Assembly (NCBI RefSeq): GCF_006345805.1
Contig: NC_043009.1
Location: forward strand, 57,226,001-57,290,000
DNA: 64,000 nucleotides
Reading direction: 5' to 3'
Origin: Octopus sinensis
Taxonomy: Eukaryota
Shown: one piece after another, positions 2,217 to 23,400 of the stretch
Numbering within the stretch: the stretch's first letter is position 1
Layout: every line of letters begins with the position of its first letter
Made by a program: the position numbers and the translations under genes
Notes under the pieces: model-generated
Told to the model about the DNA's origin: nothing
Databases searched by the model: none
The model's input: only the letters and a program-made list of their open reading frames with translations

Positions 2217-4974
2217 GTCCTAATCATGCCTGACAGCCATGATAAATGCCAAGAACTGTTGAAGAAGATCCAAGATGAGTGTAAAAGCAAAGGTCTTCCT
2301 GATTTTATGAAAAGGGAGTTCACCATGTTGCCAGCAACTACTGAGCAAAACAGTTCAAATATTCCCAAGATACGACTGCTGCAATGGAATGTTCTAGCAC
2401 AAGGTAAATAAAAATTCTCTATTAGCTTCTGTCTTATTTTGTTCTTTATTGAAATTACTCTTGCGCTCCATACTTTTTTTTAACTTAAATTAACCCTGTA
2501 TTATCTTGTAGTTTTGAGATTTCAAAGTTGTGATTGTATATTTTTAGAATGACATTGCAGTTAGAATGACAAGAGTTAAGTATACTTAAAATTAGATGGC
2601 CCGAACACATAAGCAATATGGAGCTATGGCAAAGAACAAATCAAGTTTCGATTAGGGAGAAAATATTTAAGAAAAAGTGGAAGTGGATTGGTAGCACAAT
2701 TAGAAAAGAAACACCAAATGTAGCGAAAAGTGCTTTACAGTGGAATCCTGATGGATATAGAAAGAAAGGTAGGCCTAAGAACTCGTGGCAAAGATCAACA
2801 CAAAAAAAAATTCAGAAGCTGGCTACCTGCATGGTTCTTGGTCTCAAGCATTTGCCTTATGAAGAAAGGCTGAAGACGCTCGACCTTTATTCTCTAGAAA
2901 AACGATGACGCCGTGGTGATCTCATTCTTGCTCACAACATCATAAGCGGAAAGTGTAACCTCTTAAAAGAGCTGTTCTTCACTCCTGCTCCAGAGCGTCG
3001 GCTGTAGGGTCACTCCGAAAAGCTCTATCTGCAATGATTTCATCTCAATCGAAGGAGAGGGGCTTTCTCCATCCGGGTTGCAGATCCGTGGAATAAGCTG
3101 CTGGACGAGATAGTGAAGATGCCGACGACCGCTCGGTTCAAAGTCTCTCTTGACCAGAAATGGCCTGAACTCTTTGCATGAACACCCTCCCTATACATAC
3201 TCCATGTCCCCCTACATAGCCTTGCTTTTTGCTTTTTGAGCCAAAAACTTAACTTAACTTAACTTAACTAAAAGGAACTAGAGAAAGGGGGACATTCATA
3301 GCAGAGTATAAGTACAGAAGCGAAAAATTATGCGACATGGAATTCTACTATAAGTGGCCTATACTTATATAAGTTGGAGGGTTAAAGGCAGGGAAAAAAA
3401 AATTAGCTTCTGTTTCTCTTTTGTGTGTCTGTTTCATTAGGCTGTAAGGACATCACTGCCAGCTTCTTTACAATAGTTTGATAATTTTAGGGTGGATGTT
3501 ATTGTTGTTTAGCCCCAGGTCAAAACCTGACCCAACACCTCTTTGATTGAAAGTGTTCCAGCTATGTTATTATTGCCTTCTCCACCCACCCCCAAGACTA
3601 CTGTATCCTGGTTTTTAGAATAGAAGCATTATATCCCTGTGTATTGTAAGACATAACCAAAAGGGTCTCTCTCTCTCTCTCTCTCTCCTGTACTTTCCTT
3701 CTTGTTGCCACAACAGCTAATCTAAACAATATTCTTTTCTATTCTAGGCGCAAGGCCTGAAATTTGGGGGAAGGAGCTAGATGATTAGATTGACCCTAGT
3801 ATGCAACTGGTACTTAATTTATCGACCCTGAAAGGATGAAAGGCAAAGTTGACCTTGGCAGAATTTGAAACTCAAAACGTAAAGACAGATAAAATGCCGC
3901 TAAGCATTTCACCCAGTGTGCTAACATTTCTGCCAGCTCACCACCTTACTAATATAAACAGTATTGTTAGCCTGGCGTACTAACAGAGAGCTTATAAAGT
4001 ATTTTACCTGGATTAATAATGACTCTGTTTTATGTATATATAGATAGACAGACAGGGATATAGACTCGGACAGATAGCTAAGAAAGATTGAGTTGTTTTT
4101 ACTGTTACATAATTCTGTAATCACGTTATTTTTCTCTCTTTCAGCATTGTCAGTAGGAACAGACAATTTCATCCTGTGTCCTATGAGTGCACTTTCTTGG
4201 GATACAAGAAAACTTCGCATCCTTGAAGGTATTCTAAACAACAATCCAGATGTTATCTGTTTAGAAGAAGTCGATCACTACGACTATTTATCCTCACATT
4301 TGACATCTGTTGGGTATTCTGGTATTTTTCAGCCTAAACCAGATTCTCCTTGTCTGTATTTAAGCAACTCTATGGGACCTGATGGTTGTGCCTTATTTTA
4401 CCGAAAAGATTACTTAAAACTGTTGGATTTCCAGAAAATTGGTCTTAAAAGGAAAGATGGGCAGCTGATGAACCAAGTAGCCATTCACTGCTTGTTGAAG
4501 ATTATTTCTGGTGCTGAAGAAGGCAAAGACAAATTCTCTGTAATTGTCACTCATTTGAAAGCAAAAGAAGGCTTTGAGAAACTACGTTACGAAGAGGGTA
4601 ATTTCATCTTGGAGTATATCCATGAGAACGCCAAATCATGGCCAGTTATTGTCTGTGGAGACTTCAATGCAGATCCCATGGAGGAAGTCTACAAATCTTT
4701 CTCAAAGAATGATCTTCAACTGTTTAGTGCCTACACAAAATTGTCAGACGAAGGCAGTGAACCATCATACACAACGTGGAAAGTGCGTGATTCTCCGACA
4801 GGACCAGTAGAAATTTGTCGGACAATTGACTACATATGGTGCAGTCAGAAGTCTTTAGAAATTCTTTCATTGCTCGATCTCCCCAAAGACGAAGATGTTG
4901 GACAAAACCGTCTGCCTTCACATTCCTACCCATCTGATCATCTTTCTTTAGTTTGTGACTTCCAATTGATCTAA
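2217..4974 (+). CDS. NOCT: Nocturnin (EEP-family NADP(H) 2'-phosphatase, CCR4-like); two coding exons seen, any upstream exon not identified
   Basis: Exons 2217-2403 (ctgcag| ... CAAG|gtaaat) and 4145-4974 (ttcag|CA ... TAA) join in phase 1 to give RLLQWNVLAQ-ALSVGTDNFILCP...PDVICLEEVDHY...VTHLKA...VIVCGDFNADP...TIDYIW...YPSDHLSL, the nocturnin/EEP motifs. In-frame ATG at 2226. Confidence 0.95.
2600..3395 (+). mobile_element. RTE-like LINE 3' fragment interrupted by a CR1-like LINE 3' fragment (about 2810-3270) with an (AACTT)n tail
   Basis: KWKWIGSTIRK...ALQWNPDGYRKKGRPKNSWQRS resumes after 3270 as KELEKGGHS*QSISTEAKNYATW (RTE C-terminus). The insert reads LKHLPYEERLKTLDLYSLEKR*RRGDLI...FSIRVADPWNKL (CR1 C-terminus). 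Confidence 0.8.
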
Positions 4975-6069: not shown

Positions 6070-6380
6070 TGTAACTGTAAATACCTTGCAACTGCTGCGA
6101 TAATTATTAACTGGTAATTGAACGGTAAATGTATATTTTTATATACCTTGGTCTCTGTGTTATCACATTATGTCTTATCACATAAAATGAAAGAATATTC
6201 ACTTTTGACATGTAACACTGAACCAGTCTAAAAGATTGCTCCAGGCCTGCATTAGGCTCCATGTACCCTAAGTAATGCACATGTAAAATTTGAATGAAAT
6301 TGGTTGGGTAGTTCTCAAGTTTTAGGGATTCACACATACAGACAGACACACATACACAATCTCAGTTTTATATATATATG
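6070..6380 (-). mobile_element. Helentron/DINE-1-like non-autonomous element fragment
   Basis: Minus strand begins ATATATATAAAACTGAG followed by a (TGTC)n-like microsatellite and CCAATTTCATTCAAATTTT, the typical DINE-like layout. Confidence 0.45.
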
Positions 6381-8160: not shown

Positions 8161-9243
8161 GATATATATATATATATACAAAAAAGTAACAAATTTTCAA
8201 GGTTTTTTTTTTTCAAATTTTATATGTAAAATATATTTAAACAAAAAAACAAGAACAATAACAATTATACTTTTTCTTCTTCCATCCTTCTTCTCCAATT
8301 TCTTTCAGCAAGTAAAATAAAAGTTTGTTCTGTATATATAAATCTTTCAAGTTAATAGGATCATTGATATCAGCAGAAGTTAAAGTACCACAGACAACAA
8401 CACACCAAAATACAGTCACCTCAGTTGCAGTTCATTTCGGATATATATACCAAAATAATATATTTATATCCTTGAGGTTTAAAAGGGAGGTAGTGGTGGT
8501 GGGCCCTCATTTTTGGCAAGAAATTGGTGTGTGTATGTGTGAGGAGGGGTTGTGTCATAAGGAATTTCATACAAGAAAAGTTACCCTTTTTTTTTCTTTG
8601 CTTTTCACTGGAAGAATAATTTAAATAAATTTTCGTTTCTTTGGTAAAAGTAGAGAGTTGTGAGAGTGTGTGTGTGGTTTCACACAGACTCTTGGGAGAC
8701 CAACAAAGATCTGAAGAAAGCCCAAATTTGAGTGAAGGGTAAATATTAAGTGTGAGCACATTTGTGTGTGTGTATGTTTGAGCTGCCTTAAGGTTACACA
8801 TTCAAGATATCAGTAAAGATATGTGATGAAAGCTTGTTACTCGAGTGAGAGTGAAGTTTAACTGTCTCTCTAAGCTGTGCGATGCTCACACTTCTTGGGA
8901 CATCAACGAGCAAAGAGACACAAGGAAACCTTGACACTTGAGTGAGAGTGAAACCTATCTGTGTTGTTAGCTGTATGATACACACTCTCACTGGGAATGA
9001 AAGACCTGAGAAAAGTCACATGCTTAAATAAGAGTGAAGCTTAACTATCTGCTTGCACTTACACTCAAAAGATAACAGAGATAACAATTAATATGAGGTA
9101 AGCATGACATTTGAGTGGGAGTAAACGTCTGCATATATATATATGTTTAATAGTCACACTCTTGGGAAGTTGGTGAGTAAAAGGAAACACTTGAGTGTGA
9201 GGAGTGGTTTGTGTCCAGAGGTTTAACAATGATGGTGACAGTC

Positions 9244-12200
9244 TCATGATATATGCGAAGCAGGAGTTGTGGGCGATGGTGACATCTGGGGAAAGGACGA
9301 AGTTACACTGGGGTTCTGCTGGATAAGTTCTCTGTGGCAGGAATAGCTGTGAGGGCTGATTTGAATTGGAATATGGTGTATCAGTGTTGGGTCCATCACT
9401 TGGAACACAAGCTGTTAAGTAAAGAAAAATAATTGATTTATTAATTAATAAACAATTAATTATAGCAAAACATTTTCTTTAGCCTGATATAAAATCAACC
9501 AACAAGAACTATAGTTAAAGAAGGGTCTCAAGACAAATATAAATGTTGAGGGCTTATTATCAAACCCTAGGTCTGCCTGGATTGAGCTGAACTATAGTTA
9601 GAGTCTACGTTACTCCTTAGGGGCTCATAGGGCCAGTTTTCTGGTTTCCCAGGTGTAGGTATTCCTTCCTGGAAGGGGATGCCAGTCTGTCATAGGATTA
9701 CTCATTCTTACCAGCTGAGTGGACTGGTGTGATGTGAAATGAAGAGTTTTGCTCAAGAACACAATGGATCACCCAGTCTAGGAATTGAAACAACAATCTT
9801 ACAATCGTGAATCCCAAACCCTAACCACTGGGCCATGTGCCTCCATGACCTGAACTATGATAAACAGCAATTCAGCCATGTACATCCAATCTTTTATTCA
9901 GGTATAGTGTATGCCTATGACTACAACAACCAGTATGTCCTTCTCTGTTTAAGATAGTAGTGTGTGCCTTGAAAGAGATTTGGCTGTTATTTCTAGCACA
10001 AGTTTCTTGCATTAGCTGGTAATATTGGGTGGTAGGTCTGACACATTACTCAATTTAGCACCTCCACTTAGACTTGCATGACTGTAGCGGGAAGGATTGA
10101 AGGTAAAATTAGAATTTTAACTTAAATGTTAGATCAGTGGTTCTCAACCAAGGGTCCATATGGCCCTTGTGGATCCATATAAGATTTTGTTGTTAAGGTT
10201 TATGTGCAATAAATTAATTAAACTTCTACAATACAGAAAACAATTTTTATACAATTCCTAACAAAAATATTATCAGGAATTATAATTCTAAAAATATAAT
10301 TATAAATATATAATATAGTTCTAAAAATATATTATTGTGTCTGGGGAGAGTCATTCTCTTTTAGTGCTTTATTCTATAACACACTCATTGGTTTGATTTC
10401 CACTCATTTACTTAATTATTTATTTATTTATTCTTAAAATTTCTGTTGCATCTTGCATCTTCTCAATAGTTGTTGACTCTGTCCGTTATCCGAGCTGTGT
10501 TCTTTTTGTTTGTTTGTGCGCATATGTGTGGGTGTGTGTGTGAGTCAGTGACTACTGAAAAGGTTGCAAGACGCAATGAAAATTTTAGAAAAAATAAATA
10601 AGTAGAGTGGAAATTGAACTGGTGAGTGTATTAAATAACAAGGCACTAAAAAAGAATGACTCTCCCCCAGACACAATAAAATATGCTTCAACACACAAAT
10701 TCACATAAAGAATCTTGCAAACCAAATCCCAAAACGATCTAAAAATATAATTATAAAAGATGATGGTAATATTACTACAATTCTAAAAATATAATTATAA
10801 ATCATCATCATCATCATCATCATTTAGTGTCCGTTTTCCATGCTAGCATGGGTTGGACGGTTCAACTGGGGTCTGTGAAGCCGGAAGGCTGCATCAGGCC
10901 CAGTCAGATCTGGCAGTATTTCTATGGCTGGATGCCCTTCCTAACGCCAACCACTCCGTGAGTGTAGTGGGTGCTTTTTACGTGCCACCCGCACAGGTGC
11001 CAGACGGAGCTGGCAAACGGCCACGAACGGATGGTGCTTAATATATAATATAATTCTAAAAAAATGGTGCTTGGTGACAGGAAGAGCATTCGACTGCAGA
11101 AAATCTGCATCAACAAATTCTGTCCAAGAAGTGGACGATAAAGCAGTGATGATGATGGTGATGATTTCTGACACTACACCATTGTATTGTAATGTTTAAT
11201 ATACTCTGTTTCACTACTTATGGTTCATCATATGCATGCACACATGGACATCTATGCCCAAAGAATGGAGACCCTAAGGCAGCGAGCTGGCAGAAACGTT
11301 AGCACGCCGGGTGAAATGATTAGCGGTATTTCGTCTGCGTTACGTTGTGAGTTCGAATTCCGCCGAGGTCGACTTTGCCTTTCATCCTTTCGGGGTCGAT
11401 AAATTAAGTACCAGTTATGCACTGGGGGTCGATGTAATCGACTTAATACCTATGTCTGTCCTTGTTTGTCCCCTCTGTGTTTAGCCCCTTGTGGGTAATA
11501 AAGAAATAAGTATTTCATCTGTCTTTATGTTCTGAGTTCAAATTCTGCCAAGGTCGACTTTGCCTTTCATCCTTTTGGGGTCGATAAATTAAGTACCAGT
11601 TACGCACTAGGGTCGATGTAATCGACTTAATCCCTTTGTCCTTGTTTATCCCCTCTATGTTTAGCCCCTTTTGGGCAATAAAGAAATAAGACTGGAGACC
11701 CTTACCTCAATGTAGGGATAAAAAGCTGACTGGTCTGTGATTTTGAAATAAGACTCTGTATCAAACAGTAGCTTATACACTGTTGTCTTAACGATTTTTT
11801 GTCCAGCAAGGAATGCAACATGACCATCAATGCTACTGGCACTGTAATTAAAGAAATACAAACATGTCAAAAAACAATCAGAACCATCACTACCGCACTG
11901 ATCCTTTCTTCTAAAACATGATAAGCCATGTGGTTCCTCAACAAGAAATCTGTTCTGCTTTGGCCCTCTTCTTTTATACTTCAATCCAGCACTGGATTAA
12001 CCTTTAACCCTTTAGTATTTGCATTATTCTATCAAAAGTAATGCTTATTTATTCACATTCTTTTAAATTAATCCTGCATTATCTTGTAGCTTTGAGATTT
12101 TGATGAAGTAACTGTTAATTTTTAGAATTACATAGTAGGGCTGGTGTGAGAGGCCAGATCTGGCCAATTTGAACATAAAACAGGGGAGAATATTTTGGCT

Positions 12201-13735
12201 GGATATGGTCGGTTTAAATGCTAAAGGGTTAAGCAAAATAATCATGTGCTTAGGGAATCAAGGAAAGGAGGGCACCACAGAAAGGGTTAATGGTTTATTG
12301 TACAAAAGAAATAACTCTAACCTTACTAAAATAATATTCCAAGTGATTTATATGATTGAAATATAATTTTGAAGTGTTCATGGTGTCATAGAGAGGATCT
12401 GATCAAAGTAGGAGAAAACTTGTTAAATATAAATAAAGTGGAAGAAAACAAAAATAAACGTTATTTTCAATCTGTTAGTTTTGTTTCATTTTGAAAAATA
12501 AAAATATATTTTATGGTTTATTATTGTTTATATTCTGAATTACATATATATGGTGGGCACCAAAATCTTTTAAGTGCTCAGGACCTCTGTGGATCTTGAT
12601 CTGATCCTACTTGAAACACTCCTTTCCTAGTATAAAACCACCTCTCTTGGGGACCATAGTATTGCAAACTGCCTTGTGACCCCTCTAGTGCTTGTGGTAT
12701 GAAAAACACACCTAATACACACCAAAATGGCTGGTGTTAGGAAGGGGATCCAGGCATAGAAACCATGCCATAGTAGAAAGTGTAACACACGCAGTTCTTG
12801 AACCCATCGGATCCTGTCAGTGTCCAACCCATGCCAGCATAGAACAAGGACGTGAAAAGATAATGATGATGATGTAACTTATTGATATTAACTGATATTT
12901 AAGGAGAGTGTTGTTATTGAGGGAACAGAGTAGAGATACAGTTGACAGAAACAACTTGTATTGTATAACAGCCCTTTTTCTTTTATTCAGGCCCCAACTT
13001 CATCTTTTTTCCTTCTTCACAGAATGAAGGGTTAAAGTAGGAAAAAGTTGAAGTGAGGAAGTATAGTCTAAACTATCCCCTTGTAGTTTAGACTATGAGC
13101 ATCATAATCATCATCATATTATCTTAACCACTGCTATATTTTTTTGCCTATTCTACATACTTGTGGGTTAAGATGGTTGGCATCTCTTACTGACACAAGT
13201 ACAATGTCTTTGTAAAAGAGAACAATTTTTTTTAACCATTTCAATTCTGAGCAATTAGGGAAGAACATGAGGTGAAGTTACAGTGTTTAGCTTTCAGTTT
13301 ATTTGACTTAATTCAATTCAAAAGCAAAGTCTAGACATGTATGGACTAGCAAAGACCAGTTCAGACTAAGCCAGACAAATATGAACCAGTCCAGACTAAT
13401 CTAGACCGGTACGAATCAGTCCAAACTAAACTAAACTGGAACGGACCGGTCCAAACCAAACTAGTTCTGAGTAGATCAAACCAGTATGAACCAGTCAAAA
13501 CTCAAACTAAACAAAACAATGAGTATTTTTTTTTTTACTTAGAATGTTCAACTCTTTTTTTGTTTTGTTTTGTTTTTCAGAAACTGCACTTCAGTGTTAA
13601 ACAAGTTTCTTACCTTTTCTGAAGCAGTTTCCAAGATCGCTTCTCAATCTGAATAAATAATAAGACAGGTACACCAGTTGCAGGCAGACCTTTGGAAATA
13701 TCAAATACATGGCTAGAAATTGGTGAAGTTATTTC
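9244..13735 (-). CDS. Transthyretin-like / 5-hydroxyisourate hydrolase (URAH)-like domain, divergent; 3 exons with no start codon of their own
   Basis: Exons 13735-13614, 11841-11706 and 9411-9244 with canonical AG/GT and matching phases (2, 0). Translation: EITSPISSHVFDISKGLPATGVPVLLFIQIEKRSWKLLQKSASSIDGHVAFLAGQKIVKTTVYKLLFDTESYFKITDQSAFYPYIELVFQVMDPTLIHHIPIQISPHSYSCHRELIQQNPSVTSSFPQMSPSPTTPASHIS*. It aligns end to end with the HIUase pattern SPLSTHVL..G.PA...DGR...YK..F.T..Y...FYPYVEIVF....HYHVPLLLS..SYSTYRGS. Confidence 0.9.
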
Positions 13736-16700
13736 CTGCAAAATAATGTTGTTATGTAAGGGAATTAATGAGAATTGTAATGGGAGAAAAAAACAAAACA
13801 AAAGGAGATATATGAAGAACTGAGAGGGAAATGAACAAAAAGAGAGAGAGAGAGAAAAGGGGAGGAGGAAAGGATGGAGAGAGAGCAGAAAAACAAAGAG
13901 AGGGGTGAAAATTGAAGTCTAAAAGATAGAAAAAGAGAATTAAAAATGAAAGAAATGTCATTTATATTTCTTTTACATCCATTTTCCCCAATCTTTTTAT
14001 CCAATCTGAATTGGTTACAACGGGTATTTTTATAACCATTCTTTGCTGGGATAATTGGATACGACAACCTAAAACACATTCGACCATGAAATAGCAGTGG
14101 AGCCTGTTTAGGTTTGGTTTGCTATCAAGGTGAAACAGAGTTATCTACCTTGCTCAGGGATATAACACAAGCTGTCGTACAGTTTCATATACCTATTTCT
14201 TTACTACCCACAAGGGACTAAACACAGAAGGGACAAACAAGGACAGACAAACGGATCAAGTCGATTATATCGACCACAGTGCGTAACTGGTACTTAATTT
14301 ATCGACCCCGAAAGGATGAAAGGCAAAGTCGACCTCGGCGGAATTTGAACTCAGAACGTAGTGGCAGACGACATACTGCTAAGTATTTCGCCCGGCGTGC
14401 TAACGTTTCTACCAGCTCCATCGTCATCGCATCAATATCATAATCATATCCACTTTTCCACGCTTGCGTGAGCTGGAAGGAATTTGGTGAGGCAGATGCC
14501 CTTCCTGTTGCCAGCTTTCACTTGTTTCCAAGCAAGATTAAATTTCCCCATGGCCAGACATATTTTCACAGAAGACTAGACACGAAATAACAGTGACACG
14601 TGTGTACAGTTATTGAGCAATGTCAAAACACACACACACATACAACAGGCTTCTTTCAGTTTCCATCTACCAATCCACTCACAATATATCAACATCGTTT
14701 TCACGTCCACTCTTTCATGCTTGCATGGATTGGACAAATTTTTTCAAGGTAGATTTCTATGACCAGATTCCATTCTTGTTACCAATCCTCATCCGTTTCC
14801 AAGTAAGATAATATTTCCTCAAGTCTGCCGAGCACAATCAGCACGAGCGCCAGACATGATTTCATTAAAGGTTGCAAAGGAATTACACTACTTGTATCGA
14901 TATTATGAGAATAATTTCCTCTCTTCTATCCATTTGCTCACCCCTAAATTGTCTCCAGACAAGGGACCAGGCCTGAATATTTGCAACAAAGTAGATTATA
15001 TGAATGGCACCCAAGGACCAAGTAGTGGTGTTAAACCAGGGGTTACAGACAGGAGCGGGCATAACTGTTTACCAGGCCCCTTTGAATGTGTTAACATATA
15101 GAGTGCAGGCCCCTCAGGCAGTGCCCGATTGACCGACTGCTCAGTCCAGCCCTGGTTTCAGATGAAATTTACCAGCCAAGAACAAGGAATGTTTCTTATC
15201 ACAGACTTGCACAGTTTTTGTCCAGTAAATTTCAACCATGGGGTCTTGCTTTACCTATAGTTATGGCAGAAGACAATTACTTATAGTGCCATACAATGAG
15301 ATTGAACCTGAAACCATGTAGTTCCAAGGCAAACTTCTCAACCACACCTACTGCCATTACCTCTATTTATCCCCCAGTTTCCCACCACCCCTGTACCTCT
15401 CACTTAATCCCTGTCACTGTGCATCTCTCTTGCATTCTACCTCTGCACATTTTGTATCATCTGTACTGCCACTTTTTACCCCTGCCTCCAACTGATATTT
15501 GACTGATCACACCTCTGCCCGTGTTCACCACTCACTGCATTCCTCTCTATCCCCATTTCTAACCATCTGCCACTCTCCTTTCACACTCACACAAACCTAC
15601 TTAGCTACCCATTTACCCTGTCCAATCCTCTGAATCACTCCTCTTACATTCGCTCTTCCAGTAACTTCTCTCTTTTCCAACTAAGGTAACCATGTATCTC
15701 CCCTGCATCAAGACACCTGATCCTGTCTTTCTATCATACTTTAACTTCTCATCACCTGGCATAAAGCCACCTGCTTCAATTACAACACCTCCCTCATTTG
15801 AAAGGCGGTCTCTTGCAAGTTCTTGGTGACCTTACTGGTACCAATGTCACGTAAAAAGCATCTACAACTCTCTGTAAATAGGTTGGCATTAGGAAGGGTA
15901 TCCAACCATAGAAACCATGTCAAAGCAGTCACTGGAGCATGGCACAGTCCTCTGGCTTGCTAAGTCCTGTCAAACTGTCCAGCGTATGCAAACATGAAAA
16001 AGTTATGTGCTGTGGAAGGATTCTGGTCCCCGCAAATAACTAAAAGGTGGACTGACTCATTGTTATAAAACAAAGAACTGTGTGCAATTAGCAGTTGGTG
16101 TTGGTAGCAGTTCATTGTGAGTCTCTGATATAGTGTTGAGTCTTGTGTAATAGTAATAGTAGTGTGGTGTCTAAATACTTTCTCCCTCCTGCTTCATAAA
16201 AAGCACCATTTGAGCATGGTCATTGCCACTGCCATCAGAGTGGTCCTATGCTGGTGGCACGTAAAAAGCACCATTCGAGCATGGTCGATGCCAGTGCCAC
16301 CTGACTGGCCTCGTGCTGGTGGCACATAAAATGCATTTACTATACTCTTGGAGTGGTTGGTGTTAGGAAGGGCATCAAACTGTAGAAACCTTACCAGATC
16401 ACATTGGAGCCTGGTGCAGCCTCCTGGCTTGCCAGTTCTCAGTCAAACTGTCCAACCCATGCCAGCATGCAATGCAGACATTAAACAATGATGATGATGA
16501 TGATGAATACAAGGATATAAAACTATGTTAAATGGTGACGACGATGATGATAGTGATGACAACCAGGCCTATCACAGATCTGCTGATATTAAAGGACCAA
16601 AGGAAAGCAAAGCGGAAGAGAACCAGAAGCACAAAAATGTTAGTATACCATATCTCGTGTCCCTCGTTTCTTTTTCTTTGTGTGGCCATCATTACAGTTG

Positions 16701-19700
16701 ATGATGTTGTTGTTATTATTGATATTGTTATTATTATTATTATTATGAATGTTGTTGTTGTGGTTAACCATGTTGCTGGTGTTGTGATTAAGTGGAGGGC
16801 TGAGTTCTTTTTTGCGTTTGGCTTTCAAGTTGTTAATGTCCCTCGTTGTTAACTGTTTGCCAGTCACATTGCATATATACTCTCGGATGTTCTTGGTCTT
16901 CATTCCAATGTCTATTAGCCGGTATGTCTCCGTGAGGACGTTGGGTGACAGAGACTGCCTGCGGTTCTCAGGGTACATGTGACCCAGCATCTGATGCGAG
17001 TGGTTTAAATTGATGGATCGTATCACCATTCTCTGCTTCTCTCGGTCAACTGATGCAGCAATTAGAGCAGGACATCCAGTTTTATATGTTCTGAAATTCA
17101 AAAGGGAAAACAGGTTATTATTATTATTATTATTATCATTATTATTATTAAGGCAGTGAGTTGGCAGAATTGTTATCATGCTGGACGAAAAGCTCAGTGG
17201 TATTTCACCCATAGCCACATTCTGGTTCAAATTCTGCTGAGGCTGACTTTGCCTTTCATCCTACATGATAAATTAAGTACCAGTGAAACACTGGGGTCAA
17301 TGTAATCAACTCGTCCCCTCCCCCAAAATTTCAGGCCTTGTGCCTTTAGTAGAAAGGATTATTATCATGTTGTTATTATCATTATTATTGTTATTCAGTA
17401 GTCTGTGATTATTGCAAATGAGTATTTCCAATATTCTCTGAAAACCGTCTGGCCATGGGGAAATATTACTTTTTTGGGGAAGTAGGTCGGAGTTGACAAG
17501 AACTATATAAAAAAATCAATAAAGTCTGTTCGACCCATACAAGCAGAGAAAAGAAGGTGTTAAAACGATGACGATTCATATTACACTTGCATGGAGTTGA
17601 GTGCAATGCAGTGGTTGAGAGAGGAAATCTCTTTTATGGTTTACTGTCTGAACTACTTTTGTAACTTGAGAAGTTTTCACTACGATTGTAGCAGTTGAGA
17701 GAATGAGTTGAATATGGTTCATATGCTGAGGTGGCGTTTTCTTAACAGTATAACTCAAACTCCAGATTGGAGACATGCAGTAACAATTAAGGTCGGATGG
17801 AAACTTTATACATGATAATTGGTTACAAATTTTGGCTCAAGTCCAGCAGTTTCGGGGAGGAGGCTAAGTTGGTTACATCGACCCCAGTACGCAACTGGTA
17901 TTTATTTTATCGACCTCGAAAGGATGAAAGACAAAATCGACCTCGGCGGAATTTTAACTCAGAATGTCCAGACGGTCGAAATGCTGCTAAGCATTTCGTC
18001 CGGCGTGTTGACGATTCTGCCAGCTCGCCGCCTTGTTTATATATGATAATTAAGATCCCTTTTTTTTTTTTTTTAACATTAAACACAAACTGAAGACAAG
18101 TGTGGTAACAGACCAGGTTTAGTGAAACGAGAGTTCACGTAACTAGTAGCCTTTCCTCACACAAAACCCAGGCTAAACATTAGGCGAGGATCAGGACGAA
18201 AATGAATGAAAGATTATCAAATATGCCGATCTTTCCAAACATTAACGCTAGAACGAAGAGAATGGTGATAACGCAACGTGAAACAAATCAAGCCAGAATC
18301 AACATACCTAGGATCAAACACATCTAGAACCATTCCGTCGCTCACATTATTTAGACATAGTGTGTACAGGACTACGTTATCGTACTTGTCCTCTTTTTTA
18401 AAATAATTCCATTTTGCCAACGTTTGTATTTACTATTTGATAACACAGATAACAATTAGTTTCTTTCAATTTACTGTTTCACTTCTGTATGTATGGTAGC
18501 TATCTGTTTACATACCTGCGTATCTATGTACTAATCATAAAGAATATCCACCAGTCTTTCTACACATATAGCAACATGTCAAAATGATAATAAATGTATC
18601 TGCCTATCTACATAACTATAGATTACACATACACACACAACAACAACACATAACTATCTACAACATTTGAAACGTATTCGTAGAAAATTTCATCAAAACA
18701 AATATCCATTTTTTTCAGAAAATTATTAGAAAACAGTGTTGGGTGTGAAGAACACACGTCTGTAATCACACACACACAGTATTGACAATAAAACCTTATA
18801 TTGACATCCATGCATCGTTTTAAGGGTAAAGTCAACAACGAGTGATTAACAAGTGAGAGAGAGAGAGATAGGGACAGAGAAAGAGAGACAACAACAGACA
18901 GATATAGATTGATCAAGAAGAAGAAAACACCACATGAGACATCTCCCACTAAAAAGAAAAAAAATCGTTTGAGTTGCAACTACATGATTCCAGGTTCGAT
19001 CCCACTGCAGGGTATTTTAGGCAAGTGTATTCTGTTTGATACAGCCTCCGGGTTCACCAACACCATCGAATGAAATTTGCTAAACGAAAACTGCGTCGGA
19101 ACCCATCGGAGGAACCGTTCTTGTTTTGTATGGAAGTGTGTGTGTGTGTTTATGTTTACGTTAGTCTAAAACCGGTGTTGCTTATGTTGTGTCGCTTTAT
19201 GTTCCGTAACTTAGCAATTCAACAATAGGGATTGATAGACGAAGTACAGAGGTCGATATGATAATTGAAACCAGTAAAAGAAAAGAATATAAAGAAATGG
19301 AGGAAATACTTTTGGTTGGGTCGTATGCCAGGCACAGTCCGTCGTCTCGAGTAACCAAACTGTTTACAAACATATTTGACGTATTTGTATTTGAACTTCT
19401 CGTCTAAAGGTTCGACTTTGACACATCGGGATCGGTTAGCTTTGGCAATTGTTTGACAGTCATGGATGGTGAACACAGCATTTGTCAGCTTGCAGACAGC
19501 TGCTATAGCAGAAGACAGGGCAGAAAAGTCTTCGAACTCGTCCCCAGCATTGAGTAAATCTCGACAGGCTTCGTTTGCCCCAATCTCAATCAGGGCTTTG
19601 CTCACAAGTAAATCCTCGCTGATTTTGTCCGAGCACTGCTCGTGTTGATGTTGTGGTTGATGGTGGTATTGCTGTTGTTGATGATGATGTTGGTATTGTT

Positions 19701-19917
19701 GCTGTTGCTGCTGTTGTTGTTGTTGTTGTTGCTCTTGTTCGAGTGTGGTTGTAGTCAGGACAGTGGCCGCCAGAACGTCAGCGGCCGAGGTGGATGACAG
19801 TTGCTGTTGTGGTATGACCACCAGTTCGGTGACTGCTGTTGGAGTTGCAGTCGACTGTTCGGTGGTGAGAAGGCTTACACTCTCAGCCACTACATCTTGC
19901 TCACCTGTCGTTGCCAT
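9244..19917 (-). CDS. Predicted 5-exon, 491-aa fusion gene: ZSWIM3/FAR1-like DNA-binding domain + HIUase/transthyretin-like domain
   Basis: Exons 19917-19310, 17090-16649, 13735-13614, 11841-11706 and 9411-9244 total 1476 nt with an open frame. The link uses ATG|gtatac (phase 0) to ttttgcag|GAA (phase 0). The donor is weak and has no transcript support here. Confidence 0.65.
10800..11040 (-). mobile_element. Abundant retroposon 3'-end family with (GAT)n tail (GGAAGGGCATCC core); other copies at about 570-810, 16200-16505, 30140-30420, 37230-37545, 48790-49030, 49480-49850, 53480-53715 and 57592-57752
   Basis: Near-identical CCACTACACTC..GGTTGGCGTTAGGAAGGGCATCCAGCTGTAGAAAC...CCAACCCATGCCAGCATGGAAAACGGACGTTAAACGATGATGAT blocks recur many times. 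Confidence 0.85.
11275..11690 (+). mobile_element. Tandem copies of a second SINE family (GGCAGCGAGCTGGCAGAA head); other copies at about 14200-14420(-), 33610-33830(-), 43130-43500, 51860-52230(-) and 58660-58875
   Basis: Repeated TGAGTTCAAATTCCGCCGAGGTCGACTTTGCCTTTCATCCTTTCGGGGTCGATAAATTAAGTACCAG core. Confidence 0.85.
13325..13515. repeat. Degenerate tandem repeat (CCAGTCCAGACTAA-like units) in an intron of the HIUase-like module
   Basis: Recurring accagt(c/t)ca(g/a)actaa motifs about every 30 bp. Confidence 0.55.
16640..19917 (-). CDS. ZSWIM3-N/FAR1-like (MULE transposase-derived WRKY-GCM1 zinc) DNA-binding protein module with poly-Q and poly-N tracts; no DDE catalytic domain
   Basis: Exon 19917-19310 (ATG ... 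CAA AA|gtattt) joins exon starting at 17090 (tttcag|A) in phase 2, giving GDEFEDF...YKYVKYVCKQFG...RPNQK-TYKTGCPA...LNHSH...YPENRR...LTTRDINNLK. This has the C..C..HxH ligand set. The exon reads to TAA at 16640 unless spliced at 16649. Confidence 0.85.
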
Positions 19918-21779: not shown

Positions 21780-23400
21780 CACGGTTCTGCCTGATCTTGT
21801 GATTCTTTTGAAGGCTGGCGTGGAGCACTTCTCATGCGTCTGGCCATTATTTTGTGCTTCTGCATTTTATCAGGAGAAGCATTTGTGATTTCTTTCCTTG
21901 AGTCAAGTTGAGTAACATGTTCTATGGAGTTTGTAGGGTCTGTAACTTGTTTCCTGGAGTTTGTAGGGTCTGTTGGATGGTTGTCTGTCTCTATATTGTT
22001 GGGCGATCTGGCAGGCATTTCCATCTGAGTGGTCTGTTTATACTATCTGTCTGTGCCTATGCTAGTATCTCTCAGTTCCTTTTGTTTCTCCGCAAATCTC
22101 CATGTGTTGTTTTCACACTGAAAGACCTCGGTTCTTTACATTGTCTTGCTTTTTCTCCAGGTATTCAACGTTTGTTGCTTTTTGTCAAGGACCCGTACAG
22201 CTTGTCCTTTGTGCGACGGAGGTATTTCCATCTTTGCGTACTAATCATATGTAGTTTTCATTTGTATTTTCAATTCTTCAAGACGTTTTCTCTGTCTTTG
22301 AGTTACATGAGAATAGCTCCAGCATAATGGCACAAGTGTTGTGATCGGTCTGCTCAACAGGATCTCGACGGGCGGCGGCATCTTTGAGTTTAATGGTGTG
22401 GCTCTTAGATTCAAAAATGCATTGTTTATGTCTTCTTTGCTTTGTTCACATTTTTGGATTGTCTTTTTAATTGTTTGTACCTGTCTCTCTATGAATTCGT
22501 TTGATTGGGGTATCTTGGTGATGTTGAATTCCCCATTTCTGTGTGAATTGTCGATATGGTTTTCGTGTATATTGAGGACCATTGTCGCTAAAAATTTCAT
22601 CATGTCTGACGAAGAGAGACACAGTCTTTTTGAATTCCTCTGCGAGATTTCGGGTTGATGAATGTGGCATTTGTCCGAGTTGAATACCAATCCAGATTCC
22701 TTTGCTTTTTTCATGAGTCTTTGTAGATTTCTTTCATGCTCTTCTTCGTCTTTGCCATGGACAGTGATGTCATCAGTTATTCCAGCAACCCTTGAGAGTT
22801 CTTCAATGATTTCGTCCATTCTAGCTTGAAAGATATTTTGAGATACCTTTAGACCAAATGGCAATCTAGTCCAACAATATCTTCCAAATGGGGTCCTGAA
22901 GCTTGTGAGTAGCTGACTTTCTTCATCCAGATGAACAGATCGCTGAAAGTGCTAGAACCAGCAAACTGAGGGTTCAAGCTCTTCCACCGATGGAATTTTG
23001 TGGGGGCATCTTTTCAATGCTTGATTAAGTTTTTGTGGGTCGATGCAGATGCGAAGTGATCCATCTTTTTTTTATGGAATATGCCATGCTTGAACACCAA
23101 TCTGTATATTGTTTCACAGGCTTGATGACACCCGCCCCTATTTCTTCCATCTTCTGGAGTTCAATCTTGGGCTTATGTTTCAGGTGAACTGAGCATTTCC
23201 GAGGTGGTTCAAAGAAGGGTTCCAAACATGCTTTTATGTATAATTATGCGGGTTCTTTGAAGCTGCCCAGGCTGTCGAAAAGATTTCGGTATGTTTCTTT
23301 CAAGCCTTCGATTGTTCTGAAATCAGAGTTGAATCCGTGACATGATCACAACGTATTGCGATTAATTTCATTGTCTTACATGCTGGTAATCCGATTAATT
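21780..23400 (-). mobile_element. Decayed Ty3/Gypsy pol fragment (RT joined to integrase core, internally deleted)
   Basis: RT motifs LRICIDP, WTRLPFGLKVSQNIFQARMD and GITDDITV; integrase motifs IFSDNGPQY, PQSN..IER.VQTIK and LNLRATPL. Frameshifts are present. Confidence 0.9.

What the first reader, a model, noticed from the sequence alone, without database searches (positions are those of the whole stretch)
9244..19917. Candidate new system: transposase-derived zinc DNA-binding domain fused in frame to a transthyretin/HIUase-like domain
Seen: the HIUase-like exon at 13735 has a clear acceptor but no start codon of its own. The nearest upstream coding exon on the same strand offers a phase-0 donor (ATG|GTATAC at 16649) that joins it in frame (...KKKKRGTRDM-EITSPISSHVFD...). 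This gives a 491-aa ORF: poly-Q N-terminus, WRKY-GCM1 C/C/HxH domain, helical LTTRDINNL segment, poly-N linker, basic KKKKR NLS-like patch, then the TTR fold. By eye I found no minus-strand AATAAA/ATTAAA between 16640 and 13736. Known: HIUase/TTR domains tetramerise and bind small aromatic ligands, and MULE-derived FAR1/FHY3 proteins are transcription factors. I know of no described protein with this architecture. Inference: a ligand- or metal-responsive, oligomeric transcription factor built by exon capture. Caveats: the donor is non-optimal; competing models are termination at TAA 16640 or removal of a 66-nt mini-intron (16648-16583).
Basis: partly seen in the sequence, partly recalled or inferred. 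Interest (0 to 1): 0.92.

Follow-up and report, generated by a model that had tools for sequence, protein, structure and literature searches.

The report
Transposase DNA-binder fused to transthyretin-like domain
This octopus gene really does join a DNA-binding domain taken from a Mutator-type transposon to a catalytically altered copy of a uric-acid-pathway enzyme (the fold that became transthyretin in vertebrates); the fusion is conserved across octopuses, argonauts and cuttlefish and is seen in spliced cuttlefish mRNA, but nobody has studied what it does.

Summary
Five minus-strand exons (19917-19310, 17090-16649, 13735-13614, 11841-11706, 9411-9244) give a 491-aa ORF. Its N-terminal half is a MULE-type WRKY-GCM1/FAR1 zinc domain (Pfam ZSWIM3_N) plus helices. 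Its C-terminal half is an HIUase/transthyretin domain (PF00576).

The donor sits after the same codon in all of them. Three independent cuttlefish RNA contigs are spliced across all exons.

Only the five coding exons are conserved between lineages. Both domains are under strong purifying selection. The HIUase-like exons have no start codon of their own.

The HIUase signature is altered in a fixed way: the catalytic Arg is His, and the C-terminal YRGS is CHREL plus a tail. Enzyme activity is therefore probably lost.

The best reading is a host-transposase fusion gene encoding a nuclear, probably tetrameric DNA-binding protein. Ligand or metal sensing remains speculative.

The architecture already sits uncharacterised in databases, including one in the annelid Capitella. 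I found no paper describing it. I rate it a new variant of a known kind, of moderate-to-high interest.

The parts
19310..19917 (-). Exon 1. Start codon at 19917 in the context AAAGATGG. Encodes a Gln/His-rich low-complexity N-terminus (aa 1-98) and the first half of the WRKY-GCM1/ZSWIM3_N domain, up to ...GIRPNQK. The donor CAAAA|GTATTT splits a Lys codon (phase 2).
   Evidence: The donor position is conserved in Argonauta and Acanthosepion. Exon-level DNA conservation was seen.
16649..17090 (-). Exon 2. Encodes the second half of the zinc domain (C209, H233, H235), three helices (...KQLTTRDINNLKAKRKKE), a poly-Asn linker and the basic KKKKR patch. It ends ...RDM with the weak phase-0 donor ATG|GTATAC.
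   Evidence: The donor follows the same codon in O. bimaculoides (GTATAT), Argonauta (GTAATC) and Acanthosepion (GTAAGT).
16640..16648 (-). Start of intron 2. Read-through adds only Val-Tyr before the stop TAA (16642-16640). If the intron is retained, the product is a 352-aa protein with the DNA-binding part only.
   Evidence: The read-through tails in Argonauta (20 codons) and Acanthosepion (16 codons) are unrelated.
13614..13735 (-). Exon 3. First HIUase/TTR exon (EITSPISSHVFDISKG...LLQK). It has no ATG and contains the conserved catalytic-site His359.
   Evidence: It is 83-86% identical at DNA level to Argonauta and Acanthosepion.
11706..11841 (-). Exon 4. Second HIUase/TTR exon (SASSIDGHVAF...FYPYIE). 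His398 replaces the family's catalytic Arg.
9244..9411 (-). Exon 5. Last HIUase/TTR exon (LVFQV...HHIPIQISPHSYSCHREL) plus a 26-aa Ser/Pro-rich tail and the stop at 9246-9244. CHREL replaces the TYRGS end of the family.
9146..9151 (-). ATTAAA, the first canonical poly(A) signal on this strand after exon 2. It lies 92 nt after the stop codon.
   Evidence: Whether it is used was not tested.

Best explanation
This is one protein-coding gene of the host-transposase-fusion type. Its N-terminal half derives from the DNA-binding end of a Mutator-like (MULE) transposase. That half holds a Zn-chelating WRKY-GCM1/FAR1-type domain (C184, C209, H233, H235) followed by a three-helix segment. The transposase catalytic core and SWIM finger are gone.

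A phase-0 donor after the codon ...RDM splices this half to exons 2-4 of a duplicated 5-hydroxyisourate hydrolase gene. The gene is single-copy, lies in conserved synteny, and has been kept under purifying selection since before octopods and decapods split.

The most likely mode of action is inferred, not shown:
- The protein enters the nucleus (KKKKR and KRKK patches) and binds specific DNA through the WRKY-GCM1 domain.
- The TTR-fold domain assembles it into the dimer-of-dimers tetramer typical of this family, which makes the DNA binder multivalent.
- The Gln-rich N-terminus provides an effector surface.

HIUase activity is probably lost, because four of the positions that define the enzyme are replaced in a fixed, lineage-wide way. 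The remodelled channel (His398, Cys461, His462 added to His359 and His449) could have become a small-molecule or metal site. That part is speculation.

In Octopus the weak donor, with a stop two codons into the intron, may also allow an isoform with the DNA-binding part only.
For: Gene structure and ORF:
- Established.
- Domain assignments: ZSWIM3_N 6e-13 and Transthyretin 3e-24; HIUase chains in the PDB at 3e-20.

The junction in other species:
- The same junction appears in independent models: O. vulgaris, Argonauta and Acanthosepion and O. bimaculoides XP_014779890.1.
- The donor follows the same codon in four genomes, and the Argonauta intron is only 502 bp.

Transcript evidence:
- L004 (SRR30931881) is 100% identical to the A. 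pharaonis genome in five blocks that match the exons.
- L003 (ERR12374249) and L007 (SRR29271464) are also spliced across E2-E3.

Conservation and selection:
- Only the five exons are conserved between lineages.
- pN/pS is 0.08-0.14 for the DNA-binding part and 0.12-0.17 for the HIUase part, with pS 0.64-0.93.
- The gene order RRM gene / fusion / Exo_endo_phos gene is shared.

Transposase origin and fold:
- The closest relatives of the N-terminal half are MULE transposases carrying RNaseH-like, MULE and SWIM domains.
- C..C..HxH is invariant in 24 relatives.
- The AF2 model has pLDDT 86.7, with four strands plus helices.
- The top Foldseek hits are Aft2-DNA and WRKY18.

Catalytic positions, against 131 other HIUase domains:
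- Arg is present in 117 (His here).
- Thr in 127 (Cys here).
- Tyr in 128 (His here).
- Gly in 125 (Glu here).
Against: - No RNA evidence was available for Octopus itself. Its donor (GTATAC/GTATAT) is weak.
- The two O. vulgaris models skip exon 4 and end after 40 residues of the HIUase domain. In Octopus the full-length isoform could therefore be a minor one.
- DNA binding, nuclear localisation, tetramer formation and loss of enzyme activity are all untested. Three catalytic-site residues (His359, His449, Arg463) are retained.
- The Foldseek matches to the WRKY-GCM1 fold are weak (E 0.01-0.6).
- HIUase exons get attached to unrelated upstream genes in other gene models, such as cadherin and integrase. 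Predicted fusions alone would therefore not be convincing.
Confidence: 0.72

Rival explanations
1. These are two adjacent genes. The first is a DNA-binding-only gene ending at TAA 16640. The second is an HIUase-like gene with its own undetected first exon. On this view the fusion is a read-through (conjoined) transcript or a gene-prediction artefact.
For: - The Octopus donor is weak and a stop follows two codons later.
- Canonical HIUase genes have a tiny first exon that is easy to miss.
- Gene models elsewhere chain HIUase exons to cadherin or integrase genes.
- Unspliced contigs that read through into intron 2 exist for cuttlefish (P0006, P0159). They also retain the end of intron 1, so they look like genomic DNA or pre-mRNA.
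Against: - The donor position and phase are conserved in four genomes across the octopod/decapod split.
- There is no ATG for E3-E5 in Octopus or Argonauta.
- Nothing conserved lies in intron 2, which is only 502 bp in Argonauta.
- No poly(A) signal follows 16640.
- Three full or near-full spliced cuttlefish transcripts carry the junction.
- No HIUase-only protein of this type was found among 1.84 billion representatives.
Confidence: 0.07
2. The fusion is real, but the C-terminal domain is still a working 5-hydroxyisourate hydrolase. It would act in purine catabolism, and the N-terminal part would serve only for localisation or regulation.
For: - His359, His449 and Arg463 are kept and the domain is strongly constrained.
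- The copepod BrkDBD-HIUase proteins keep the full canonical set including YRGS. An active enzyme attached to a DNA-binding domain is therefore not absurd.
Against: - The catalytic Arg is His.
- The C-terminal TYRGS is CHREL followed by 26 more residues. Cys, His and Glu at these three positions occur in 0 of 131 other family members.
- The YRGS end is the recognised signature of HIU hydrolases (PMC3646786). By established knowledge of TTR evolution, losing it is what opened the channel in transthyretin.
Confidence: 0.1
3. The fusion is real and the TTR-fold domain is a sensor. Binding of a purine catabolite, another small aromatic compound or a metal in the remodelled His/Cys-rich channel controls DNA binding or activity.
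For: - The substitutions are fixed across Octopus, Argonauta and Acanthosepion. They add His398, Cys461 and His462 to the retained His359 and His449.
- The family's channel binds 5-HIU in the enzymes and thyroxine in TTR (established knowledge).
- DNA-binding domains of three different kinds are found fused to HIUase domains in protostomes.
Against: - There are no ligand data of any kind.
- Simple oligomerisation explains the constraint equally well.
- The Capitella fusion has different residues at these positions (Leu, Gln, Val).
- No tetramer model was built.
Confidence: 0.2
4. It is an active or recently active transposon (Pack-MULE-like) carrying a captured host gene fragment, not a host gene.
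For: - The N-terminal half is most similar to MULE transposases.
- A reverse-transcriptase fragment and SINE copies lie nearby.
Against: - There is no transposase catalytic or SWIM domain.
- The locus is single-copy and syntenic in Octopus spp. and Argonauta.
- Purifying selection has acted on both halves over a long divergence.
Confidence: 0.01

Closest known systems
Host-transposase fusion genes of tetrapods (e.g. KRAB-transposase fusions such as KRABINER, SETMAR, GTF2IRD2; Cosby et al., bioRxiv 10.1101/2020.05.07.082677)
   Same: A transposase DNA-binding domain and a host domain lie on separate exons, are joined by splicing into one ORF, and are then kept by selection.
   Different: The partner here is a metabolic-enzyme/TTR fold rather than KRAB or another chromatin domain. 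The transposase part is N-terminal and supplies the start codon. The host is a mollusc and the fusion is old, predating the octopod/decapod split.
FAR1/FHY3 of plants and ZSWIM1/ZSWIM3 of vertebrates (domesticated MULE transposases)
   Same: They share the same N-terminal WRKY-GCM1-type zinc DNA-binding domain (Pfam ZSWIM3_N above cut-off; FAR1 weak). FAR1 and FHY3 are transcription factors.
   Different: Those proteins keep the transposase RNaseH-like core and the SWIM finger. This one keeps only the DNA-binding end and adds an HIUase domain.
Vertebrate transthyretin
   Same: It is an HIUase paralogue that lost the YRGS end and the enzyme activity and took on a non-catalytic role, while keeping the fold.
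   Different: TTR is a secreted hormone carrier with a signal peptide and no DNA-binding domain. The substitutions here (Arg to His, TYRGS to CHREL plus a tail) are different and arose independently.
Capitella teleta ELU04385.1 (CAPTEDRAFT_223509)
   Same: It has the same two-domain order (ZSWIM3_N/FAR1 then HIUase) and also lacks YRGS. Its linker and the start of its HIUase domain share one exon.
   Different: Identity is only 25-31% per domain. The domains are not reciprocal best matches of the cephalopod ones, and the introns in the DNA-binding part differ. Common origin is unresolved.
Plant TTL / bifunctional allantoin synthase (OHCU decarboxylase-HIUase fusion)
   Same: It is a known natural fusion of the HIUase domain, and was also recovered here (P0071, P0128).
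   Different: The partner is the next enzyme of the same pathway, and the HIUase part stays catalytic.
Yeast Aft1/Aft2 iron-responsive factors
   Same: Aft2 is the best structural match of the modelled N-terminal domain (4lmg, probability 0.98). It is a WRKY-GCM1-fold DNA binder.
   Different: There is no detectable sequence relationship beyond the fold, no TTR domain, and the match is weak (E 0.01, TM 0.29-0.46).

Membership tests
HIUase/transthyretin superfamily (PF00576) | Sequence match over the whole ~110-residue domain | tested here: met
   Pfam 86.2 bits against a cut-off of 25.3, covering profile positions 1-108 of 109. PDB HIUases match at 3e-20 to 1e-15 over residues 2-113.
5-hydroxyisourate hydrolase (the enzyme) | Catalytic His, Arg, His triad | tested here: not met
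   His359 and His449 are present. The Arg position is His398 in Octopus, Argonauta and Acanthosepion, whereas Arg is present in 117 of 131 other domains.
5-hydroxyisourate hydrolase (the enzyme) | C-terminal tetrapeptide YRGS at the very end of the chain | tested here: not met
   The end reads ...SYSCHRELIQQ plus a 26-aa tail. YRGS is terminal in 95 of 131 other domains, and Tyr is present in 128 of 131. The signature is described in PMC3646786.
5-hydroxyisourate hydrolase (the enzyme) | Hydrolysis of 5-hydroxyisourate; homotetramer | not testable with these tools
   This needs recombinant protein.
WRKY-GCM1 / FAR1-type zinc DNA-binding domain (Pfam ZSWIM3_N) | Profile match above the curated cut-off | tested here: met
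   ZSWIM3_N 49.6 bits against 27.8; DUF5575_N 38.6 against 24.1.
WRKY-GCM1 / FAR1-type zinc DNA-binding domain (Pfam ZSWIM3_N) | Four zinc ligands C...C...HxH on a four-stranded sheet | tested here: met
   C184, C209, H233 and H235 are invariant in 24 aligned relatives. The AF2 model shows four strands with pLDDT above 90.
WRKY-GCM1 / FAR1-type zinc DNA-binding domain (Pfam ZSWIM3_N) | Structural similarity to solved WRKY-GCM1 domains | tested here: inconclusive
   The top Foldseek hits are Aft2-DNA (probability 0.98, E 0.01) and AtWRKY18 (E 0.3-0.6). No hit has E <= 0.001.
MULE transposase (autonomous element) | RNaseH-like/MULE catalytic domain and SWIM finger | tested here: not met
   Both are absent from the 491-aa protein. 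They are present in its nearest non-cephalopod relatives.
Host-transposase fusion gene | Transposase-derived and host-derived domains on separate exons in one ORF | tested here: met
Host-transposase fusion gene | Fusion transcript exists | tested here: met
   Met for the cuttlefish orthologue: L003, L004 and L007 are spliced across all exons. For the Octopus of this window only gene models are available.
Host-transposase fusion gene | Purifying selection on both parts | tested here: met
   pN/pS is 0.08-0.17 in both domains, against 0.4-0.8 in the N-terminal region and C-terminal tail.

The most novel reading that the evidence does not exclude
The HIUase-derived domain may be a ligand- or metal-sensing tetramerisation module that gates a transposon-derived DNA-binding domain. 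That would make the protein an animal 'one-component' regulator. It would also be one instance of a recurrent, so far unnoticed class in protostomes: MULE-DBD+HIUase in cephalopods and Capitella, BrkDBD+HIUase in copepods, and zinc-finger-like+HIUase in Hymenoptera and Coleoptera. In this class a purine-catabolism enzyme fold has repeatedly been recruited to transcription control.
Probability: 0.15. Interest if true: 0.85.

Novelty: new variant of a known kind. Interest (0 to 1): 0.62.

Why it matters
This would be a second, independent case of the HIUase fold leaving enzymology for a new role. The first is vertebrate transthyretin, a textbook example of neofunctionalisation. Here the fold is attached to a DNA-binding domain.

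It also extends 'transposase capture', so far documented systematically only in tetrapods, to an old gene of cephalopods with an unusual host partner.

Cephalopod-specific regulators are of interest for the origin of their nervous system and body plan. This one is single-copy, strongly conserved and easy to test.

Similar DBD-HIUase architectures in an annelid, copepods and insects suggest a general design principle. One candidate is that a small tetramerising domain with a phase-compatible second exon is easy to capture. That idea could be examined across genomes.

Tried and rejected
- **Word-index homologue search with the HIUase part alone.** It returned nothing: only 11 candidates were collected, which is a tool limitation and not a biological result. 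The first search was swamped by poly-Q/poly-N words. I compensated with the exhaustive HMMER search and a trimmed alignment.
- **Exact look-up of the 491-aa model.** No transcript contigs could therefore be retrieved for this Octopus.
- **The 66-nt mini-intron model (16648-16583).** It gives ...MQICDRPGCHHYHHRRHHLT*. In O. bimaculoides the equivalent intron is 59 nt and the tail reads on into a repeat. Nothing similar exists in Argonauta or Acanthosepion. Rejected.
- **A conserved alternative first exon in intron 2.** blastn against Argonauta and Acanthosepion found only SINE fragments. Rejected.
- **Orthology of the Capitella fusion.** Its domains are not reciprocal best matches of the cephalopod ones: the HIUase domain ranks 140th of 140 and the DNA-binding domain 42nd of 48. 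The intron positions also differ. Left unresolved.
- **Read-through short-isoform contigs in cuttlefish (P0006, P0159).** They also contain the unspliced end of intron 1, so they are genomic DNA or pre-mRNA and not evidence for a short mRNA.
- **Pfam assignment of the insect N-terminal CxxC...H...H motif.** Only sub-threshold hits were found (zf-C17orf113, zf-U1).
- **Literature searches for the architecture.** Nothing relevant was found.
- **Second structure job and tetramer modelling.** Not run. The tool gives monomers only, and the sequence evidence for the TTR fold is already decisive.

Full report
**1. What is in the sequence**

| Exon | Coordinates | Donor / acceptor context |
|---|---|---|
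| E1 | 19917-19310 | donor CAAAA\|GTATTT, phase 2 |
| E2 | 17090-16649 | acceptor TTTCAG\|AAC; donor GATATG\|GTATAC, phase 0 |
| E3 | 13735-13614 | acceptor TTTTGCAG\|GAAATA |
| E4 | 11841-11706 | |
| E5 | 9411-9244 | stop included |

Joined, they give exactly the 491-aa ORF described, with the junction ...KKKKRGTRDM-EITSPISSHVFD....

If intron 2 is not removed, the frame closes two codons later (MVY*, TAA at 16642-16640). That gives a 352-aa protein.

E3 and E4 contain no Met. There is also no ATG in frame between the nearest upstream stop and the E3 acceptor. The HIUase-like exons therefore cannot be translated on their own from this DNA.

No AATAAA or ATTAAA lies on the minus strand between 16640 and 13736. 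The first one is ATTAAA at 9151, 92 nt after the final stop.

**2. The two halves**

The N-terminal part:
- Pfam places residues 123-235 in ZSWIM3_N (6e-13, 49.6 bits against a cut-off of 27.8) and in DUF5575_N.
- Its nearest relatives outside cephalopods are Mutator-like transposases. They carry ZSWIM3_N + ZSWIM1-3_RNaseH-like/MULE + SWIM, sometimes with a Ulp1 protease. One example is a shrimp 'ZSWIM3-like' protein.
- In an alignment of 24 such domains the invariant columns include C184, C209, H233 and H235 (numbering of the 491-aa model). This is the C...C...HxH zinc ligand set of the WRKY-GCM1 superfamily described by Babu et al. (PMC1702500).
- An AlphaFold model of residues 95-300 has pLDDT 86.7. 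It shows four strands followed by three helices, the last being the 'LTTRDINNLKAKRKK' helix.
- Its best PDB matches are the Aft2-DNA complex (4lmg, probability 0.98, E 0.01) and the AtWRKY18 DNA-binding domain. These are weak, but they are the expected fold.
- None of the transposase catalytic core is present.

The C-terminal part:
- Residues 356-463 match PF00576 (HIUase/Transthyretin) end to end at 3e-24.
- They match solved HIUases at 3e-20 to 1e-15.

**3. Is the fusion real?**

Four lines of evidence say yes.

(a) Independent gene models use the same junction.
- O. vulgaris CAI9732081.1: ...RDM|EITSP.
- O. bimaculoides RefSeq XP_014779890.1 (480 aa, both domains): ...RDM|EVTSP.
- Argonauta hians Ahia01_000453700 (555 aa): ...QEM|EFPSP.
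- Acanthosepion pharaonis 'uraH' (397 aa)...KEM|EMSSP.

(b) In the genomes the donor follows the same codon in every lineage.
- The donors are GATATG|GTATAT (O. bimaculoides), GAAATG|GTAATC (Argonauta) and GAGATG|GTAAGT (Acanthosepion).
- The sequences that would be read through into the intron are unrelated: 2, 20 and 16 codons.
- In Argonauta intron 2 is only 502 bp and is largely a SINE fragment.
- blastn of the whole locus against Argonauta and Acanthosepion finds only the five coding exons plus repeat fragments. There is no conserved alternative first exon.
- Gene order is conserved in the window, O. bimaculoides and Argonauta: RRM gene, fusion gene, then an Exo_endo_phos gene on the opposite strand.

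(c) Transcripts exist.
- Three short contigs from independent public sequencing runs contain the coding sequence as one uninterrupted ORF.
- L004 (SRR30931881, 1860 bp, 398 aa) is 100% identical to the A. pharaonis genome. It matches in five blocks whose ends are the exon borders, spread over 25 kb of genome.
- L003 (ERR12374249, 2264 bp, 422 aa, full length) shows the same splicing.
- L007 (SRR29271464, 265 aa) starts in intron 1 but is spliced across E2-E3-E4-E5.

(d) Selection acts on both halves.
- Between Octopus, Argonauta and Acanthosepion the DNA-binding part has pN 0.05-0.13 against pS 0.67-0.93.
- The HIUase part has pN 0.08-0.15 against pS 0.64-0.90.
- The poly-Q N-terminus and the C-terminal tail are much freer, with pN/pS 0.4-0.8.

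A caution applies. HIUase exons are attached to unrelated upstream genes (cadherin, a retroviral integrase) in other gene models. Predicted fusions alone would therefore not have been enough. The case rests on conservation and transcripts.

For the Octopus of this window itself I could retrieve no RNA. Its donor is weak. The two O. vulgaris models skip exon 4 and terminate early (...LLQKSLCSK*). Isoform proportions in Octopus therefore remain open.

**4. State of the HIUase domain**

I aligned it with 131 other HIUase domains from the exhaustive search. The cephalopod proteins keep the two catalytic His and the Arg of the C-terminal motif:
- His359: His in 125 of 131.
- His449: His in 130 of 131.
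- Arg463: Arg in 117 of 131.

They replace the other defining positions:
- The catalytic Arg (117 of 131) is His398.
- The final T-Y-R-G-S has become C-H-R-E-L. In the other domains Thr occurs in 127, Tyr in 128, Gly in 125 and Ser in 106.
- A 26-residue Ser/Pro-rich extension follows.

Cys, His and Glu at those three positions were seen in none of the 131. All of these replacements are identical in Octopus, Argonauta and Acanthosepion.

The terminal YRGS is the accepted signature of HIU hydrolases (PMC3646786). By established knowledge of TTR evolution, its loss is part of what turned the enzyme into a binding protein in vertebrates.

I therefore file the domain in the HIUase/TTR superfamily but not as an HIU hydrolase. 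Loss of activity is inferred, not shown.

**5. How it most likely works**

Shown:
- One gene and one ORF.
- A transposase-derived Zn DNA-binding domain plus a TTR-fold domain.
- Conservation across coleoid cephalopods.
- Expression as a fused mRNA in cuttlefish.

Inferred from family properties:
- Nuclear import through the KKKKR and KRKK patches.
- Sequence-specific DNA binding by the WRKY-GCM1 domain.
- Assembly into a tetramer by the TTR fold, giving a multivalent DNA binder.
- The Gln/His-rich N-terminus acting as an effector region.

Speculative:
- The remodelled channel now has His398, Cys461 and His462 next to His359 and His449. It may bind a small molecule or a metal and make the protein a sensor.

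Origin:
- The origin fits the 'transposase capture' route described for tetrapods (bioRxiv 10.1101/2020.05.07.082677).
- A MULE DNA-binding exon pair with its own start codon came to lie upstream of a duplicated HIUase gene. Its donor was spliced to the acceptor of HIUase exon 2.
- Exon 2 normally receives a very short first exon. It begins at about the fifth residue of a canonical HIUase.

**6. Distribution and related architectures**

The exhaustive profile search of 1.84 billion representatives and the word-index searches found the fusion in these taxa:
- Octopus (three species or assemblies), Argonauta, and Acanthosepion with close relatives.
- One annelid protein, Capitella teleta ELU04385.1 (428 aa; ZSWIM3_N/FAR1 + Transthyretin).

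In Capitella:
- The acidic linker and the start of the HIUase domain lie in one exon.
- A separate 136-aa HIUase gene sits immediately upstream on the same strand.
- The Capitella domain has also lost the catalytic His, the Arg and YRGS.
- However, neither of its domains is the reciprocal best match of the cephalopod ones, and its introns differ.
- I cannot say whether this is one ancient lophotrochozoan fusion or a second, independent one.

Other DNA-binding-domain + HIUase proteins also surfaced:
- Copepods have a Brinker-type HTH + fully canonical HIUase, including complete ORFs from transcriptome assemblies of Neocalanus and Calanus.
- Parasitoid wasps and a longhorn beetle have a CxxC...HxxxxxH zinc-finger-like N-terminus + HIUase, in RefSeq models.

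The MULE DNA-binding domain is likewise found fused to nucleoplasmin (paddlefish) and to KRAB (newt).

**7. Comparison with what is known; novelty**

It works like a host-transposase fusion transcription factor. Its N-terminal domain belongs to the same family as FAR1/FHY3 and ZSWIM3. Its C-terminal domain parallels transthyretin as a non-enzymatic HIUase derivative.

It is not a MULE transposase, because it has no catalytic core. By the signature residues it is not an HIU hydrolase.

The proteins are already in public databases under uninformative names ('putative protein DDB_G0292252', 'uraH', 'hypothetical protein'). The architecture is therefore not undiscovered data. I found no paper that mentions it.

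I rate it a new variant of a known kind and score interest at 0.62. The structure of the finding is solid and unusual. The attractive functional idea is untested.

Noticed in passing
P0038 and cluster (copepods Neocalanus flemingeri, Calanus glacialis); P0039/P0175 (Diachasmimorpha longicaudata), P0056 (Copidosoma floridanum), P0130 (Anoplophora glabripennis): Other DNA-binding-domain + HIUase proteins exist in arthropods. Copepods have a Brinker-type HTH (BrkDBD, 5e-14) + canonical YRGS HIUase, including complete ORFs from transcriptome assemblies. Wasps and a beetle have an unassigned CxxC...HxxxxxH zinc-finger-like N-terminus + HIUase. The HIUase domain seems to be a recurrent partner of DNA-binding domains.
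   Followed up: partly
L005 548-5455 and 6001-8510 (Capitella teleta KB302363.1): The annelid fusion gene lies directly downstream of a separate 136-aa HIUase gene on the same strand. This arrangement is expected if the fused copy arose by tandem duplication. In Capitella the linker and the start of the HIUase domain share one exon.
   Followed up: partly
P0011 (Polyodon spathula XP_041088089.1), P0012 (Pleurodeles waltl XP_069063569.1): The same MULE-type ZSWIM3_N DNA-binding domain is fused to a nucleoplasmin core (a pentamerising domain) in paddlefish and to a KRAB box in a newt. These are further candidate host-transposase fusions.
   Followed up: no
window 13614 / 9411 (E3-E5 join); P0001 and P0003 of O. 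vulgaris: Both O. vulgaris gene models skip exon 4 and splice E3 directly to E5. This shifts the frame and ends the protein at ...LLQKSLCSK*. It is either an annotation error or a real isoform that removes most of the TTR-fold domain.
   Followed up: no
window 22241-22864 (-): This is a 207-aa ORF fragment of a retroelement reverse transcriptase (RVT_1, 1e-12) about 2.3 kb upstream of the gene. The O. vulgaris model P0003 has a retroelement-like N-terminus spliced onto the DNA-binding exons, probably a chimeric prediction.
   Followed up: partly
window 4093-4974 (+): This is a large exon of an Exo_endo_phos family gene (1.6e-20) on the opposite strand downstream of the fusion gene. The order RRM gene / fusion gene / Exo_endo_phos gene is the same in O. 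bimaculoides (L006) and Argonauta hians (L001).
   Followed up: partly
window about 17931-17876, 14350-14195, 11642-11557, 11507-11341 (introns 1, 2 and 4): There are several copies of a tRNA-like SINE, and of a second repeat that begins with (ATC)n followed by ...GCTGGCATGGGTTGGAC.... They cross-match repeats in the Argonauta locus. They account for most of the size difference of intron 2 between this window (2913 bp), O. bimaculoides (about 1.5 kb) and Argonauta (502 bp).
   Followed up: no
P0057, P0069 (cadherin + HIUase), P0053 (Integrase_H2C2 + HIUase): Gene models in other animals attach HIUase exons to clearly unrelated upstream genes. This is probably because the true first HIUase exon is tiny and gets missed. 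It is a warning that predicted HIUase fusions need transcript support.
   Followed up: no
window 16648-16640; L006 about 6176-6184: In both Octopus species the intron 2 donor is weak (GTATAC, GTATAT) and is followed by a stop after two codons. The cuttlefish donor is consensus (GTAAGT). This could allow regulated production of a DNA-binding-only isoform in Octopus.
   Followed up: no
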